From contig NW_019217883.1 of NCBI RefSeq assembly GCF_002571385.2, forward strand, positions 110,189-174,188: a stretch of 64,000 nucleotides of DNA, read 5' to 3'. The notes under the pieces were generated by a model that searched no databases, was not told where the DNA came from, and saw only the letters and a list, made by a program, of their open reading frames with translations. This stretch comes from Stylophora pistillata. Lineage: Eukaryota. Numbering within the stretch: the first letter of the stretch is position 1; every line of letters begins with the position of its first letter. Made by a program: the position numbers and the translations under genes. Shown here piece by piece: positions 5,950 through 64,000 of the stretch.

Positions 5950-6429
5950 CACTTTTATGACTTTTATCGATGTACATGAAGTCCAGCTCCTGTCAAAACC
6001 CAACCACAGCCGTTCAAGAGCATTACATACATTTTCAAAACAGTAAAATAACCGGAAAATCATCACGCACAACGAAATGATTTACGAATCACGTTTGATT
6101 CAGCTCTTAATTCACAGGTCACATTTGAATAAAAAATTCGTTCACGTGGACACGAAGAGATCTTAATATCTTTAATAACCATTCACGAATGAAAAAAGTC
6201 AAATCACGATTAACCAGAAAAAAATCGCCCAATCATGCTTCACTTAAGAAGTATAGGGGGCCCTCTACAACGAACCTTCACAGCAAAACATTAAGGAGGA
6301 AAAAAAAGCGTACTATCTATCAAGTAATTTCATATTTCATAGTGAGGGCCGCTTAGCGGGTGATGATTTAAGATTGATAATGCGAGTGAGTCCATATACG
6401 AACTGTACAAATTAGGTTGATCAACTTAA

Positions 6430-6592
6430 CGGCCTGCACCCAGTTGGCTTGTTAGCTCAATTGGTAGAGCGCTGCACTAGTATCGCAGAGGTCAGTGATT
6501 CGAGTCCCGTACAGGGCTGATTTTTTTCAGGTCTGATTTTCGCTATTGCATAAATAGTGCTATCTACTGCGAGGATCGTGCATCATATGTAA
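6430..6592 (+). mobile_element. Solo copy of the tRNA-Thr(AGT)-like repeat unit (cloverleaf 6446-6518)
   Basis: GGCTTGT TA GCTC AATTGGTA GAGC G CTGCA CTAGTAT CGCAG AGGTC AGTGA TTCGAGT CCCGT ACAGGGC T, followed by a T8 run. Both flanks resemble the 61.5-62.8 kb array unit. Mismatches in the T-stem, acceptor stem and anticodon stem suggest a pseudo-tRNA/SINE. Confidence 0.8.
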
Positions 6593-25319: not shown

Positions 25320-25945
25320 GCCACCGACAACAGTCCTTCTCAGGACTACACTCACCCGGACGATCAGACTACACCTTCACAAAGAGGAAAGTCTTAGATT
25401 TTTCTGTGTGATGAAGTTATCAATGTGACTCGCTTTTTTCTCGAAAATTATCATGACAAGTGTTTTCTTTTATTATTGCTACATTTTCGTTTACCAAATA
25501 TGGATGTTGTACAGGGTTAGAATTGTTTGGTTGTACAATTTATTTAAGGCGTAGGCGTAGGTATATCACGGGTCAGTCACAAGACTTTTCTAACCCAGCT
25601 TTATGCAGCGGGGAAATCAAAGCATTTCAAGGCCGCATTTGATTGAAACAAAGATCGCTTGTAATCAGAGTAAATGTTTAATTAGCTTTTAATTTAGTCA
25701 TTTCTTCGCGTCGGTGTTTTGCAGTAACCTGTTGCGGCTGTTTCTTTAAAAAATGCAAACAATTAACAATATTTTGCTTATTAGATGAAAATATCATCTC
25801 TTGAGTCAGAAAATTTTTGAAGCCACTTAATCATATCAGATGTTAACGCAAATACGTGTGCCCCCTTAACGATATCACACCTATTGACTACTGAGCCCGG
25901 AAATTCCTGTTTTCTACATTTAAACCACATTTTACAGCCTGAAGC

Positions 25946-58200: not shown

Positions 58201-61200
58201 TTAATCAATTTTCGCCCTGTCTAAATACTTCTTGAAAAATAATTTTTGGTCTTCCGTGTGCTCTTTCAAACAGGCCAGGGCCATAGATTCAATCAAAAAG
58301 CGACCGAGTCTTTCATTCCTTTTAAAACAAGTCTTACGAGTTGGAGCATCATACGTTAGCACCTATGAATGGACAAGGTTGCGACTTTTTTTTTTACAGT
58401 GACTAGTTGGTATGCGATAGACAACTTGCAATAAATTAAAGATAAAAAGCATGGCTATTAAAGTTTCTTTCTGGCTTTGAGAAGTAAAGATTCTCTTTAT
58501 CCGATCAGTATCGTAGATTTCTTTCTGTCTCAGGTTCGGGAAGCTTATAAAAAGTATATGAAAAAAATAGCCAAGTTTCTCGGCGGAGGCCCCGACTCAG
58601 ACGAACAAATGATGAAAGTGTTTGACCTGGAAACTGAATTGGCAAAGGTTAGGAGAAGAGAATGTATTTGAATTGGTTAATGGTATCTTGTCCTTCTTTG
58701 TTGATTCCCATTATGTCTGAGATATTTCCATACTCATAGCCCTCCTTCTGTTGGATTCCATGATTTAGTAAGAACCCATAAACTCCGATATACCCCAACA
58801 TCAGTTATAGCATAACCAAAGTAAAGCGCGCGCTCTGATTGGGCAATTCAGCGTCGACCATATGCCCATGGGTGTACGCTGCTGACGTGAGCAAATGCAA
58901 AGACTAGTTTTCCGCGCGCGCTTGTTTTTCCTAGTCATGAAAGATTTGTCAAATAAAAGAAAACTCTTTTGCTACAATGCATCAATGTTATGTTATAAAA
59001 CAAATGGTAAACGCCACAGTGTACACTATTGACTTATGGATGCACATGGGAGGATTGCTTAGCACTCAAGAAGCAAGAATCGCTCTCGGCTATCGCCTCG
59101 TGCGACTCTTACGCTTCTTTCGTGCTTAACAATCTCCCGCGTGCATCCTTAACTCAATAGTGTACGCTGTAGTGTTTACCATTTGTTAACCCTACCCATT
59201 TCCTGTGGCATTACAGTAAATGGTTTGAACCCGGGGGGGGGTACCTGGACGATCGCACTACACTGTCTCCTGTGGTATTGATAAGATGAATTTGTTACAC
59301 ACTCAACAGATTCTTTAGTTTGCGATTATTCTTTTATTCTCATTACCTTAATGTTTCACTCAAGGTTCGTACGGTAAGGAGAAATTAGATCATAGCAGAA
59401 ACTGTAGGGAGTGAAAGGGTTGATTTATTCAGCTATTTTTTTTCCTTAAAACATAGTTGTATAGAACGCCAGATGAAAGCTCCATTATAGAAACTCTGCA
59501 GAAAAAATTACCAGCTGGAATGGCCACCTTTGAGCTGAGGACAACTTTGCAGCGATTCAGCTCCGCATCTAGATTAAAAGTAAGTTGACGATAAAAAATC
59601 ACGCTCTTCTCGGGATCGACACAATTACATCGGGAAGTGTGCCTGAACACCATTTATTTTTACCTGTGCACATGCCACTCGGCTTTCATAACTGAGATCG
59701 TGTTAAGACTTTCTGCCTGTTATTTTGTGGCTATACTCTCAGCCAAAACACTAATATTTCGCAAGCATGTGCCGTGTCCCATGTTTTCATGATGCAGCTA
59801 CATTTGTCATGTTTAGATCCCTAAGTGATTGTCGCACGCTTGCCCAGGGGTGGTTAAAGCTATAACAATTTCCCTGTTTGAAAGACGATTGACATTTTCC
59901 GTTCTTTGACTAGCTCAGCCTTTATCACTTTCCTTGTTTTCTGTTGTTACTTTTTTTTGTTAAATGTATATTTTTTGTTATTTCTTAAAACGTTTTCCAG
60001 CCTTCCTTGTCGTTTTCCAGCCTTCCTTGTCGAAAAATAGCATCTGCTCGAAAGCCTGGAAAGAGATTCAAATCACTCGCGCGCGTTGCCCGCTACGCGC
60101 GAGCGGTTGCGCGTGAGCACGGAGGCGTGAAGTAGCGCCAGAGCATACATAGCGCCAGAGCCCATGTCCGACTTTCTGTTGAATGAAGATTTTTTTCAGT
60201 TCCTCGTTTGAATTTCTTTCTGTTTCTTTCACTTGTTATTCAGCTCGAAAACCTTGTGGACTTGGTAAATGCAGTTTTTAAAAAACAGGGTCGGAAATTC
60301 AAGAAAGACGAGAAAATTCTCGCTTATCCCAGAGATATTTACGCCAATCTTTTCAAGTTTTACGAGAATAGGACAAGAACGTAAGTGTTTGTGATTTTAT
60401 TTTGTTTAGCATTTGTTATATCATTTAGAAAACCGCGAAACGGAAATTATGTCCATGTTGGATTAATTAAAGTATCTTTTTTTACATGTGATGGTCATTT
60501 TACTTCATGTAATTAACTTTTCTGTCAACTGGGTAGCCGAAAATTGCGATAAGAAGACTCGTGGGAAGGCTTGCGGGTGGCTTACTCAAGGATAACAAAC
60601 TTTTTTGGGACGAAATAAGAAAGATAGTCCACTTTGAGCGCAGTCGTAATATGAAGAGAAATGTGGTTGAGTTGTCACGCGCGAAGGACGAAGAAAAAAA
60701 CACGAGCTTCCTCAGAAGCTAAGTTTCAGGTTACGTGGTCGGATGTGGTAACTTTAATGTTAACCACCAACGAAGCTTTTTCAATAGCCGTCCATCAAAT
60801 ACGAATCAATCATCTTAATGACTTACATTTCAGCCAAATTGAACTACGTATTATTAAAAGCTGTGTTAAGTTGTAGATTGAAAAGGTTAACTGAATTGCA
60901 TCACGGTATATCAAAAGGGCAGTCAAGTTCACGCGGCTAACTTTGCGGCCGAACTTTTCCAGCGGTTTGATGTGTGATAACTTATAACGTGATGGATGAG
61001 CACTCAATGTTGTACTAGTAAAATATTAAGCCTGGTTTTGGAATATTAAACCATGGCAGACCGGCGAGCTATCGCTATTTGCACTCCCACTAAGACGTCG
61101 GCGTATAAGGATGGAACTCGTTCACAGCTGGTATAGACGTCGAAATGTCAGCGTTCTTTTTTTTTATTTTTATTTTATTTGATTCACAAACTTACAAATT

Positions 61201-63450
61201 ACAAATACAGTCACTTACGTAATTTACAGTACAATACGACTACTCACATTATTTACAGGATAACAACGGTTTACACTACTTACAAAACAGTTCAAAGCTT
61301 ACACCACTATCATTACATTCTCCTATTACTACTATCACTACTAAGTGCCACTGTTACTAGTTTTACAGTATTATAATACACTATACTATAAAATAGTAAC
61401 ACAGATATTACTACTTCTAGTATTGCAATTAGCTTAACCAGTTACTTATTTATTAGCCACTTTTTATTAAATTTATCTAAAGTATTATTGAACAACAACA
61501 AACATATGAAACATATGAGTGAACTGCGGTTATGAGACGTGTATAAGAACGATCCTTCGCAGTAAAGCACTATTTGAGCAATAGTGGAAATCAGACCTGA
61601 AAAAAATTTCAGGCCTGTACGGGATTCGAACCACTGACCTCTGCGATACTAGTGCAGCGCTCTACCAATTGAGCTAACAAGCCAACTGGGAGCAGGCCAT
61701 CAAATTAATTCGATATAAACCCGTAGATGATAAATCGAACAACAACAAACATATGAAACATATGAGTGAACTGCGGTTATGAGACGTATATAAGAACGAT
61801 CCTTCGCAGTAAAGCACTATTTGAGCAATAGTGGAAATCAGACCTGAAAAAAATTTCAGGCCTGTACGGGATTCGAACCACTGACCTCTGCGATACTAGT
61901 GCAGCGCTCTACCAATTGAGCTAACAAGCCAACTGGGAGCAGGCCATCAAATTAATTCGATATAAACCCGTAGATGATAAATCGAACAACAACAAACATA
62001 TGAAACATATGAGTGAACTGCGGTTATGAGACGTATATAAGAACGATCCTTCGCAGTAAAGCACTATTTGAGCAATAGTGGAAATCAGACCTGAAAAAAA
62101 TTTCAGGCCTGTACGGGATTCGAACCACTGACCTCTGCGATACTAGTGCAGCGCTCTACCAATTGAGCTAACAAGCCAACTGGGAGCAGGCCATCAAATT
62201 AATTCGATATAAACCCGTAGATGATAAATCGAACAACAACAAACATATGAAACATATGAGTGAACTGCGGTTATGAGACGTGTATAAGAACGATCCTTCG
62301 CAGTAAAGCACTATTTGAGCAATAGTGGAAATCAGACCTGAAAAAAATTTCAGGCCTGTACGGGATTCGAACCACTGACCTCTGCGATACTAGTGCAGCG
62401 CTCTACCAATTGAGCTAACAAGCCAACTGGGAGCAGGCCATCAAATTAATTCGATATAAACCCGTAGATGATAAATCGAACAACAACAAACATATGAAAC
62501 ATATGAGTGAACTGCGGTTATGAGACGTATATAAGAACGATCCTTCGCAGTAAAGCACTATTTGAGCAATAGTGGAAATCAGACCTGAAAAAAATTTCAG
62601 GCCTGTACGGGATTCGAACCACTGACCTCTGCGATACTAGTGCAGCGCTCTACCAATTGAGCTAACAAGCCAACTGGGAGCAGGCCATCAAATTAATTCG
62701 ATATAAACCCGTAGATGATAAATCGAACAACAACAAACATATGAAACATATGAGTGAACTGCGGTTATGAGACGTATATAAGAACGATCCTTCGCAGTAA
62801 AGCACTATTTGAGCAATAGTGGAAATCANCAGAGTGTAATAATGTTTTGATGTCTTTTCCAAAACATCAAAGACCTTGTTGTTGATCATCAAAGAGTGAG
62901 AGATTTCCAACATGGGGTTAGTGTTTGTTTTTAAGTGGGACGGTATAGCACGTCGAAGACCCGCCCAAACCAAAAAGTTTGTTTTGTTGATAATATTTAA
63001 AATAACATTATAGGAGTCTATATTATTTAATTCAAATAAGAGATCGTTTGTCAGCGTTCTTGATTTCGTCGAACATAGGGAGAATATATTTTCTTGGCAA
63101 AGTTAAATTAATTCGAACTGAATGTGACTTGAGAGATTTTATGTGATTCTTTTGGTGACTCTTTACGGGAAAAACACATTTGCTTAAACTGATTTCCTTC
63201 ATCATTTTAATTTGCATGCAGGGACCCCTTGATTGTTGTCAATTACATCATCTGGACTGTTATCAATAACTTTATCAGAGTGATGCCGCAAAAATACAGG
63301 GAGGCACGGGATGAGTATGTGACCGCCATGTCAGGAAAGAAAACCAGATACCGCTGGAAAGATTGCATTAACGGAATGCAGTCAATATTTGGAATGCCGC
63401 TGGGCCTGCTGTTCGTGGACGTAGCATTCGACGAAAAAAGCAAGGAAACG
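55248..63450 (+). CDS. M13 family metallopeptidase (neprilysin/endothelin-converting-enzyme-like), type II membrane, partial; continues off the right edge
   Basis: Exons 55248-55482, 56946-57136, 57220-57477, 57932-57997, 58534-58647, 59457-59579, 60244-60380, 63222-63450. Signal anchor followed by C..C, LNQSVDPCEDFYEYVCGGW, PLKKLIDKMGGW, VFDLETELAK, NYIIW and RWKDC..FGMPLGLLFV. The catalytic HExxH is outside the window. Confidence 0.92.
58808..59186. mobile_element. Palindromic non-autonomous element with CTCTGATTGG subterminal motif
   Basis: Arms AAATGGTAAAC..GTACACTATTGA..GGATGCAC / GTGCATCC..TCAATAGTGTAC..GTTTACCATTTG around CTCGGCTATCGCCTCG. Similar decayed hairpins at about 8190-8290, 48105-48300 and 56015-56170. 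Confidence 0.7.
61490..62828 (-). repeat. Tandem array of 247-bp tRNA-containing units (5 complete + 1 partial, ending at an N)
   Basis: Unit starts at 61491, 61738, 61985, 62232, 62479 and 62726. Units are identical except for one G/A site. Confidence 0.97.
61611..61683 (-). tRNA. tRNA-Thr(AGT)-like cloverleaf (probable pseudo-tRNA/SINE); identical copies at 61858-61930, 62105-62177, 62352-62424 and 62599-62671
   Basis: Acceptor GGCTTGT/ACAGGCC (7 bp), D-arm GCTC/GAGC, anticodon loop CTAGTAT, B-box GGTTCGAATCC, downstream T7. There is an A-C mismatch in the anticodon stem and two mismatches in the T-stem. Confidence 0.6.
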
Positions 63451-64000
63451 GTAAAAAATCTCAGAAAGCTCATCCCAGTATTACAGTTTTACCACACCTT
63501 TTACAAATAAGAATAGTTGATTGTCTGCTCAGTAATGACGAAAGAAATGCGACAACTTTGTATTAGCATGATATCAACAAGGAATTTAAAATTCGTCTAG
63601 AGAACCGTTGACTAGAAGAAAAACATTTCCCGAGAATGTTCGACCGAATTAGTTGCCCTCTTTTGTATTTTTTTGATATTTGATTATTCTATTTTTCTGT
63701 CATATGGATACGATGATATGATTGGCAAAACCATAAGACCCCAGCTTGTTCTGTTCTCTTGCCATATCTTAAATGTATTAATGTAGGTGTACTTTGTCTA
63801 GAATTTTGAATCTCTTGCTCTGTAAATCTTTTATTATTTTATAATATACGTATTAAACACCGCCCGCCTCGAGTAGCCTTTGCTAACTGCGGGCAGTACA
63901 TATTTTTTGAAATATTGTAATAATAATAAGAATAAATAATAATAATAATGATAATAATAATAATATCTATAAAATCCTCTACAATACAAAATATTAACAG

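What the first reader, a model, noticed from the sequence alone, without database searches (positions are those of the whole stretch)
61490..62828. Near-perfect head-to-tail array of a 247-bp unit carrying an INTERNAL tRNA-Thr-like gene, hairpin and Pol III terminator
Seen: at least 5.4 almost identical units. On the minus strand each has a ~54-nt leader, a 73-nt cloverleaf with intact A/B boxes and a perfect acceptor stem, a CAGGCCTGAAA/TTTCAGGTCTG hairpin containing T7, a second hairpin GCACTATTTGAGCAATAGTG, and a CATATG/GTT simple tail. Known: ordinary tRNA-SINEs start at the tRNA because Pol III initiates there, and they are dispersed as monomers. Inference: a unit that carries its upstream leader and inserts as a multimer needs another route, such as multimeric/circular RNA copied by a Penelope-type or other RT, rolling-circle replication, or local unequal crossover. 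It could also be a high-copy source of tRNA-like small RNA. This is the best candidate here for an undescribed system.
Basis: partly seen in the sequence, partly recalled or inferred. Interest (0 to 1): 0.85.

Follow-up and report, generated by a model that had tools for sequence, protein, structure and literature searches.

The report
tRNA-bearing repeat array inserted Penelope-style
The array is real. It is one arm of a mobile, non-coding 247-bp repeat built around a worn tRNA-Thr copy, which has pasted ready-made tandem blocks into hundreds of sites of this coral genome with the insertion scars typical of Penelope-like retrotransposons.

Summary
Observation confirmed. Window 61490-62828 holds 5.4 head-to-tail copies of a 247-bp unit with only 2 substitutions. 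Each full unit carries a tRNA-Thr(AGT)-like gene on the minus strand. The array stops at an assembly gap (N at 62829) and lies inside a 5'-truncated L1/Tx1-like LINE copy.

The array did not arise where it sits. The same unit forms arrays at dozens of unrelated loci. In 10 of 10 fully assembled insertions the block is flanked by a 12-14 bp target-site duplication (0 of 90 mismatched controls). It consists of two head-to-head inverted arms. In 11 of 11 insertions with both ends assembled (10 with a testable TSD), one outer end carries an extra 47-49-nt tail and the other stops at a fixed ACGT site.

Multicopy tandems, an inverted 5'-truncated copy, a one-sided tail, short TSDs and 5' truncation are together the published hallmark of Penelope-like element (PLE) integration. 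The unit has no hammerhead ribozyme. It therefore looks like a ribozyme-free, tRNA-bearing relative of animal retrozymes.

Not shown: the autonomous PLE partner, whether the template RNA is linear or circular, and what the tRNA module does.

This scan reached the same reading before on other windows of this genome. I found no paper that describes it.

The parts
61490..62828 (-). Tandem array of 5.4 units of 247 bp. The tRNA-sense strand is the minus strand. This is the tail-bearing arm of an insertion; its outer (3') end is at 61490.
   Evidence: TRF; unit phasing; the tail-type end GAACAAC at 61490 matches the tail ends at other loci.
61611..61683 (-). tRNA-Thr(AGT)-like module with A and B boxes, first of five. 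The others are at 61858-61930, 62105-62177, 62352-62424 and 62599-62671.
   Evidence: ARAGORN; Rfam tRNA 48.9 bits with 3 non-pairs; 73/73 identical between the 247-bp and 251-bp families.
61490..61537 (-). The 48-nt tail: the 3'-terminal segment of each unit in tRNA sense, ending in CATATG repeats and (GTT)n. It is present at only one outer end of complete insertions.
   Evidence: 11 of 11 insertions have one tail end and one no-tail end.
61537..61540 (.). ACGT site next to TATATA, in the loop of hairpin 3. The no-tail outer ends of other insertions fall here, as do some inner junctions. It recurs every 247 bp.
61523..61563 (-). Hairpin 3, with stem ACTGCG/CGCAGT. The stem is kept in the 251-bp family although the loop and tail have diverged.
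   Evidence: Fold; alignment; coordinates.
61568..61586 (-). Hairpin 2, 7-bp stem and 5-nt loop. There is one compensatory A-U to G-C change between families.
61592..61617 (-). Hairpin 1, 11 bp with one G-U, holding the T7 run. Its 5' half is the 3' acceptor strand of the tRNA-like module.
62829..62829 (.). Single N, an assembly gap. The array breaks off at unit position 104, between hairpins 1 and 2.
   Evidence: Three other loci (L010, L051, L062) have the antisense arm ending at unit positions 100-105.
61159..61489 (-). 3' part of the host element, a 5'-truncated L1/Tx1-like LINE copy with an A-rich tail (T-rich on the plus strand).
   Evidence: 24 genomic copies at 84-98% identity; related copies encode RVT_1 and zf-RVT.
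62830..63048 (-). Upstream part of the same LINE copy. In intact copies 514 bp lie between this part and the 3' part.
61146..61158 (.). 13-bp target-site duplication of the host LINE (TGTCAGCGTTCTT). The second copy is at 63049-63061.
6420..6591 (+). Solitary, 5'-truncated 172-bp copy of the sister 251-bp family, with a tRNA-like part at 6446-6518. It ends at the no-tail position.
   Evidence: (Rfam tRNA 32.5 bits).

Best explanation
The array is one arm of a retrotransposed insertion of a non-autonomous, non-coding element whose unit is 247 bp. Read in tRNA sense, the unit runs: leader, tRNA-Thr-like module, three hairpins, and a 48-nt tail.

The family integrates as ready-made head-to-tail multimers by target-primed reverse transcription from both strands of a staggered break about 12-14 bp apart. 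One target 3' end primes at the end of the tail. The other primes about 48 nt upstream, at an ACGT site in the loop of hairpin 3. The two cDNAs grow towards each other and are joined at a variable point. The result is two head-to-head arms inside one TSD.

This geometry is that of Penelope-like elements. The most likely driver is therefore the RT plus GIY-YIG endonuclease of a resident PLE acting in trans.

Shown: mobility, TSDs, arm geometry, the two fixed ends, 5' truncation, and conservation of the tRNA-like module and the hairpins.

Inferred: that the enzyme is a PLE, that the template is tRNA-sense RNA, and that the tRNA-like module serves as a Pol III/TFIIIC-binding or recognition module.

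In the window the second arm is not assembled. The gap at 62829 probably sits at or near the arm junction.
For: Copy number and spread:
- The unit occurs at least 268 times at about 100% identity on dozens of contigs.
- Its head-to-tail junction 24-mer occurs 405 times against 0 for the control.
- The tRNA-like core occurs 8,293 times and the 3' motif 11,848 times. The excess of 3' ends over cores indicates 5' truncation.
- Flanks of different arrays share nothing with one another, so there is no carrier element.

Insertion geometry:
- 10 of 10 complete insertions have 12-14 bp TSDs; 0 of 90 mismatched controls reach 7 nt.
- 11 of 11 insertions with both ends assembled have one tail end and one no-tail end; the eleventh (C295) ends at a gap, so it has no TSD check.
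- Among the first 100 genome hits of the 3' motif, opposite-strand neighbours within 1 kb are head-to-head 17 times and tail-to-tail 0 times.
- The two arms of one insertion share private variants (L056, L053).
- Unrelated DNA is captured between arms in L062 and L063.

Fit to published PLE behaviour:
- PLE hallmarks are partial or multicopy tandems, an adjacent inverted 5'-truncated copy, a 30-40 bp tail at one end only, short TSDs, and capture of foreign DNA between pLTRs (PMC8557442; PMC3846280; read).
- The genome holds at least 149 scored GIY-YIG matches out of 1,590 candidates.

Conservation:
- The tRNA module is 73/73 identical between the 247-bp and 251-bp families, while the tail is 44% identical.
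Against: - No autonomous PLE sharing the unit's 3' end was identified.
- The tail is 47-49 nt, longer than the 30-40 nt reported for PLEs.
- There is no hammerhead ribozyme, which canonical PLE pLTRs and animal retrozymes carry. The Naiad clade of PLEs also lacks one.
- LINE twin priming also gives TSD-flanked inverted insertions.
- The diagnostic features are seen at other loci, not in the window copy, which ends in a gap.
- Inner units and inner junctions come from a short-read scaffold assembly and may be collapsed, so the near-100% identity within arrays is partly uncertain.
Confidence: 0.72

Rival explanations
1. A LINE-mobilised SINE-like element. A stringent-type LINE recognises the 3' hairpins and (GTT)n end, and the inverted arm arises by twin priming as in L1.
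For: TSDs of 12-14 bp and often A/T-rich targets next to the (GTT)n end. The tRNA-like head with A and B boxes is SINE-like. LINEs are abundant here and several arrays lie in LINE copies.
Against: Twin priming gives internal priming sites that vary, and in L1 affects only a minority of insertions (from my own knowledge, not checked here). Here 11 of 11 insertions have the second end within about 5 nt of one site, and head-to-head pairs dominate 17 to 0. Multicopy tandems and a one-sided tail are described for PLEs and stated not to be seen in LINE TPRT (PMC8557442).
Confidence: 0.13
2. A retrozyme-type life cycle. The template is a small circular RNA (monomer or oligomer) copied by rolling-circle reverse transcription. 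This explains the multimers and the internal start sites. The reading is compatible with a PLE enzyme and concerns only the form of the template.
For: The unit size and tandem form match animal non-LTR retrozymes (PMC7229834; 10.64898/2026.07.22.740005). Both cDNA start sites are internal to the repeat. The sense RNA is strongly structured, z = -4.5. The window array shows the variant order G,A,A,G,A,A at unit position 52, as a trimeric circle would give.
Against: No self-cleaving ribozyme was found, and I found no CUGANGA core by eye in the unit sequence, so no known route to unit-length ligatable ends exists. Arrays mix two subfamily haplotypes irregularly (L001, L026, L053), which a monomeric circle cannot give. 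A long linear transcript of an existing array, or template jumps between terminal tails, explains multimers equally well. No read-level RNA data were available.
Confidence: 0.22
3. An ordinary satellite or amplified tRNA gene cluster that arose where it sits by unequal crossover.
For: A near-identical head-to-tail array. tRNA gene arrays exist in some animals (from my own knowledge).
Against: The same unit sits in arrays at dozens of unrelated loci with TSDs. The T stem is broken. The array begins exactly at the family's tail end, at a clean break in a LINE copy.
Confidence: 0.03
4. A DNA-level foldback-type transposon whose long inverted arms are made of tandem repeats.
For: Inverted arms built of tandem repeats inside a TSD.
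Against: The two termini are never the same (11 of 11 are mixed), the arms are unequal and 5'-truncated at variable points, tiny 3'-end-only pairs are common, and there is no associated transposase.
Confidence: 0.04

Closest known systems
Non-autonomous Penelope-like elements (for example MRC1/Chlamys derivatives) and PLE pLTR-mediated trans-mobilisation
   Same: Multicopy head-to-tail insertions, an adjacent inverted 5'-truncated copy (head-to-head), a tail at one end only, short TSDs, strong 5' truncation, capture of foreign DNA between repeats, and trouble for short-read assemblies.
   Different: The unit is built around a tRNA-like module. The tail is 47-49 nt, not 30-40. No sequence link to an autonomous PLE has been shown yet.
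Animal non-LTR retrozymes (tandem hammerhead units of 170-400 bp; corals, mussels, amphibians)
   Same: Small non-coding units in tandem arrays, low GC, TSDs when present, a proposed PLE dependence, and presence in corals.
   Different: There is no hammerhead or other known self-cleaving ribozyme. A tRNA-like module with A and B boxes and a T7 run stands in its place. Circular RNA is not shown.
tRNA-derived SINEs
   Same: A tRNA-derived module with intact A and B boxes but degraded pairing, structured 3' hairpins, a simple-repeat end, thousands of copies, and non-coding.
   Different: Copies do not start at the tRNA 5' end. They insert mostly as multimers with an inverted arm and two fixed 3' end types. 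A strong Pol III terminator follows the tRNA directly, so a Pol III transcript could not carry the 3' recognition part.
L1 twin-priming inversions and SVA-type composite retroelements with internal tandem repeats
   Same: A TSD-flanked insertion with an inverted 5' segment, and tandem repeats inside a non-autonomous retroelement.
   Different: The second priming site is fixed, the inversion is the rule rather than the exception, and the whole element is the repeat.

Membership tests
PLE-type (Penelope-like) integration product | Partial or multicopy head-to-tail tandem of the inserted unit | tested here: met
   Window array of 5.4 units; arrays of 2-16 units at other loci; 405 exact head-to-tail junctions.
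PLE-type (Penelope-like) integration product | Adjacent inverted 5'-truncated copy, head-to-head | tested here: met
   11 of 11 insertions with both ends assembled; 17 head-to-head against 0 tail-to-tail neighbours. Not visible in the window copy because of the gap at 62829.
PLE-type (Penelope-like) integration product | Short extension (tail) present at only one end of the insertion | tested here: met
   One end at unit positions 1-5 and the other at positions 48-53 in 11 of 11 insertions. The length is 47-49 nt against the published 30-40 nt.
PLE-type (Penelope-like) integration product | Short target-site duplication around the whole complex insert | tested here: met
   12-14 bp in 10 of 10 insertions; controls 0 of 90.
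PLE-type (Penelope-like) integration product | 3' end shared with an autonomous RT plus GIY-YIG element of the same genome | not tested
   GIY-YIG matches are abundant, but their DNA could not be fetched.
Animal non-LTR retrozyme | Type I hammerhead ribozyme in every unit | tested here: not met
   Rfam at E<=1 over 61000-64000, and at gathering score over the whole window, finds only tRNA. I found no CUGANGA core on either strand by eye in the unit sequence.
Animal non-LTR retrozyme | Unit-length circular RNA | not testable with these tools
   Only assembled contigs of RNA runs could be laid.
tRNA-derived SINE | tRNA-related head with Pol III A and B boxes | tested here: met
   The B box GGTTCGAATCC and the A-box region are intact, while the T stem has 2 non-pairs.
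tRNA-derived SINE | Copies begin at or near the tRNA 5' end and are dispersed as monomers with a LINE-type tail | tested here: not met
   Units carry a 53-nt leader. Arm 5' ends vary. Insertions are mostly multimers with an inverted arm.
Functional tRNA-Thr gene cluster | Canonical cloverleaf pairing | tested here: not met
   Two adjacent non-pairs in the T stem and one in the anticodon stem.

The most novel reading that the evidence does not exclude
A ribozyme-free analogue of retrozymes: a PLE-dependent parasite in which a tRNA-like module replaces the hammerhead. In this reading, host tRNA enzymes (RNase P/Z, possibly a ligase) or Pol III/TFIIIC, rather than self-cleavage, produce or mark the unit-length, possibly circular or terminally redundant, template RNA. 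The fixed ACGT site and the tail would mark the two defined priming or resolution points of PLE integration.
Probability: 0.2. Interest if true: 0.8.

Novelty: new variant of a known kind. Interest (0 to 1): 0.6.

Why it matters
PLE integration is poorly understood. The origin of the tandem and inverted copies and of the one-sided tail is unexplained, and there is no in vitro system. This family offers thousands of young, short, non-coding insertions with base-precise ends, a natural data set for working out the mechanism.

If a PLE partner is confirmed, the known non-autonomous passengers of PLEs would extend from hammerhead retrozymes to tRNA-derived modules. That would blur the line between SINEs and retrozymes.

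On the practical side, the family places more than 8,000 A/B-box modules in the genome, which are potential Pol III/TFIIIC sites. It also causes many of the gaps in this coral assembly.

Tried and rejected
- Carrier element (Helitron, MITE or larger transposon). After masking the unit, array flanks share nothing adjacent to the arrays, and the TSDs argue against Helitrons.
- Hammerhead or other ribozyme in the unit. None found.
- Homology of the unit to the hammerhead-bearing repeat at window 25271-25319. None by eye.
- PLE ORFs in the 64-kb window and about 300 kb of fetched loci. None by a GIY-YIG motif scan or an ORF listing; only LINE RT, endonuclease and zf-RVT turned up.
- Two scans of JGI metagenome contigs, one for the hairpin-3 pattern and one for the tRNA-like core, gave 0 hits.
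- Read laying gave contigs only. It shows the family in DNA runs and in polyA and random-primed RNA libraries, and higher summed depth over the tRNA-like core. It gives no RNA ends, strand or circular junctions, and the tool warns that depth cannot rank parts of a stretch.
- Literature searches for a tRNA-bearing PLE passenger or a coral tRNA-SINE array found no description.
- Whether the 514 bp of LINE missing in the window is a deletion or lies in the gap could not be decided.
Full report
**1. The observation**

Window 61490-62828 is a head-to-tail array: period 247 bp, 5.4 copies, 99% matches, no indels (TRF). Against the reference unit there are two substitutions, both at unit position 52 (61541 and 62282).

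On the minus strand every full unit carries a 73-nt tRNA-Thr(AGT)-like sequence (ARAGORN; Rfam tRNA 48.9 bits against a gathering score of 29). The A- and B-box regions are intact. The fold is worn, however. Infernal marks two adjacent non-pairs in the T stem and one in the anticodon stem. It is a tRNA-derived module, not a working tRNA gene.

Downstream in tRNA sense follow, in order:
- an 11-bp hairpin whose loop and stem contain a T7 run;
- a 7-bp hairpin;
- a third hairpin with stem ACTGCG/CGCAGT;
- a CATATG-repeat/(GTT)n end.

The sense RNA folds much better than shuffles (z = -4.5). The antisense RNA folds less well (z = -3.1).

The array breaks off at a single N (62829). Such single Ns sit at the junction between the two arms of the same repeat at several other loci of this assembly. 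The right boundary and the copy number in the window are therefore unknown.

**2. The local context**

The array lies inside a 5'-truncated copy of an L1/Tx1-like LINE on the minus strand. That copy spans 61159-61489 and 62830-63048 and is flanked by a 13-bp TSD at 61146-61158 and 63049-61. At least 24 related LINE copies exist in the genome, and some encode RVT_1 and zf-RVT.

In intact copies 514 bp lie between the two parts that flank the array here. That piece is either deleted or hidden in the gap. The array's left end is a clean break in the LINE sequence and coincides exactly with the start of the unit as phased here (GAACAAC...).

**3. The family**

The genome is 397.6 Mb in 5,513 scaffolds. 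Runs holding the sequence are labelled as a coral. Counts in the assembly:
- The unit occurs at least 268 times at about 100% identity on dozens of contigs.
- Its head-to-tail junction 24-mer occurs 405 times, against 0 for the control.
- A 53-nt stretch of the tRNA-like core occurs 8,293 times with up to 2 mismatches.
- A 15-16-nt motif of the 3' region occurs 11,848 times.

Sister families exist with other periods. One has a 251-bp unit. A solitary 172-bp copy of it lies in this window at 6420-6591.

Independent DNA runs and polyA or random-primed RNA-seq assemblies from 11 studies hold the sequence. After masking the unit, the flanks of different arrays share nothing next to the arrays. The arrays are therefore independent insertions, not parts of a larger carrier.

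**4. The insertion signature**

At loci assembled on both sides, the repeat forms two arms in opposite orientation. The tRNA sense points outward from the centre, so the arms are head-to-head. The whole block is flanked by a direct duplication of 12-14 bp in 10 of 10 cases. Pairing the left flank of one locus with the right flank of another gave nothing of 7 nt or more in 90 controls.

The two outer ends are never alike. In 11 of 11 insertions, including one of the 251-bp family, one end is at unit positions 1-5 (the end of the (GTT)n segment). The other is at positions 48-53, at or beside an ACGT next to TATATA in the loop of hairpin 3. One end therefore carries an extra 47-49 nt, the tail.

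Further points:
- Inner junctions vary. I saw microhomology, filler, short slippage repeats, a perfect palindrome centred on the same ACGT (contig C295), and a sense arm that begins exactly at the tail start (L062).
- The two arms of one insertion share private variants (L056, L053), as expected for one event.
- Unrelated DNA of 0.6-1.7 kb is enclosed between arms inside one TSD in two cases.
- Genome-wide, among the first 100 hits of the 3' motif, opposite-strand neighbours within 1 kb are head-to-head 17 times and tail-to-tail never. Many are tiny pairs of 3' ends only.
- Together with the excess of 3' motifs over cores, this shows strong 5' truncation.

**5. What this matches**

Published descriptions of Penelope-like elements list exactly this combination (PMC8557442 and PMC3846280, read):
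- frequent 5' truncation;
- an inverted 5'-truncated copy directly adjacent, most often head-to-head;
- a 30-40-bp tail at only one end;
- short TSDs;
- capture of foreign sequences between the repeats;
- resulting problems for short-read assemblies.

These authors state that the tandem/inverted structures and the tail are not seen in LINE target-primed reverse transcription. Animal non-LTR retrozymes, which are tandem hammerhead units of 170-400 bp and are abundant in a coral, are proposed to be non-autonomous PLE derivatives (PMC7229834; 10.64898/2026.07.22.740005). This genome holds many GIY-YIG endonuclease matches (149 of the 150 candidates scored, out of 1,590), the endonuclease type of PLEs.

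**6. Mechanism, with its status**

Shown:
- The element is mobile.
- It inserts as multimers.
- It makes 12-14 bp TSDs.
- It has two defined 3' end types and variable 5' ends.

Inferred from the geometry:
- Both 3' hydroxyls of a staggered break prime cDNA on tRNA-sense RNA. One primes at the tail end and one at the ACGT site. The two cDNAs are joined in the middle.

Inferred from the literature match:
- The enzyme is a PLE RT-endonuclease acting in trans.

Open questions:
- How multimers arise. Options are a long transcript of an existing array, template jumps between terminal tails, or rolling-circle copying of a circular RNA.
- Arrays mix two subfamily haplotypes irregularly. This argues against a monomeric circle, although inner units of a short-read assembly are not fully reliable.
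- The T7 run directly after the tRNA-like part should stop Pol III (general knowledge). A Pol III transcript could then not include the 3' hairpins and tail, so the template is more likely a Pol II or read-through transcript.

On the tRNA-like module: it is 73/73 identical between the 247-bp and 251-bp families. The leader (80%), hairpins (81-85%, with one compensatory A-U to G-C change in hairpin 2), 3' region (63%) and tail (44%) have all diverged. The module is therefore under constraint or is exchanged between families. Because the boxes are intact while the stems are not, promoter or TFIIIC binding is more likely than tRNA-like folding. This is inference.

**7. Rivals**

- LINE-driven twin priming explains the TSDs and an inverted arm. 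It does not explain a second end fixed within about 5 nt in 11 of 11 cases, the near-universal inversion, or the multimers.
- Local unequal crossover, a functional tRNA cluster, a Helitron-type carrier and a foldback DNA transposon are contradicted. The evidence against them is the TSDs, the unrelated flanks, the broken T stem and the unlike termini.
- An assembly artefact cannot produce matching TSDs together with two different end types. It can, however, affect copy numbers and inner junctions.

**8. Limits**

- The diagnostic junctions are seen at other loci, not in the window copy.
- No read-level RNA data were available.
- Two metagenome scans found nothing.

**9. Earlier notes and novelty**

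Earlier notes of this scan on other windows of the same genome describe the same family and reach the same Penelope-style reading. I reached the geometry and the literature before seeing them. I re-tested their main claims here: the TSDs, the two fixed ends, and more than eleven thousand units. They are AI notes and are not independent evidence.

Four literature searches found no description of a tRNA-bearing PLE passenger or of such arrays in corals. I rate it a new variant of a known kind.

Noticed in passing
window 6420-6591 (+): Solitary 5'-truncated copy (172 bp) of a sister family whose genomic arrays have a 251-bp period. Its tRNA-like part at 6446-6518 passes the Rfam tRNA gathering score (32.5 bits). 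The copy ends at the no-tail position.
   Followed up: yes
window 61146-63061: The host of the array is a 5'-truncated L1/Tx1-like LINE copy with a perfect 13-bp TSD. 514 bp present in other copies are missing exactly where the array and the gap lie.
   Followed up: yes
L051:2019-4835, L058:1733-4966, L048:5886-6638: Several other arrays also sit inside or directly next to LINE ORFs (RVT_1, Exo_endo_phos). This may only reflect LINE density; a target preference was not tested.
   Followed up: partly
L048:190-300: A different tRNA-derived repeat forms a head-to-head palindromic junction at the 5' part of its tRNA-like sequence. Other tRNA-derived families in this genome may therefore insert in the same way.
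   Followed up: no
L062:1746-3438 and L063:2372-2980: Non-repeat DNA (about 1.7 kb and 0.6 kb) is enclosed between arms of the repeat within a single TSD, like the host-DNA capture described for Penelope pLTRs.
   Followed up: partly
L018:1-1420 (contig C295): A perfect inverted repeat with 710-bp arms and no spacer, centred on the ACGT site of the unit. It is either a true zero-loop palindrome or an assembly product.
   Followed up: partly
window 25265-25320 (+): A minimal hammerhead-like motif (CTGATGA ... GAAAC ... GTC) sits in an unrelated repeat. Rfam at gathering score does not report it, and it has no similarity to the 247-bp unit.
   Followed up: partly
window 61541 and 62282: The only two variant positions in the array are 741 bp (three units) apart, giving the order G,A,A,G,A,A. 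That is too few repeats of the pattern to call a higher-order repeat.
   Followed up: no
window 61700-61725 (-), leader of each unit: Part of the leader (ACGGGTTTATATCGAAT) is nearly the reverse complement of the T arm, and pairs with it in the predicted fold in place of the cloverleaf.
   Followed up: no
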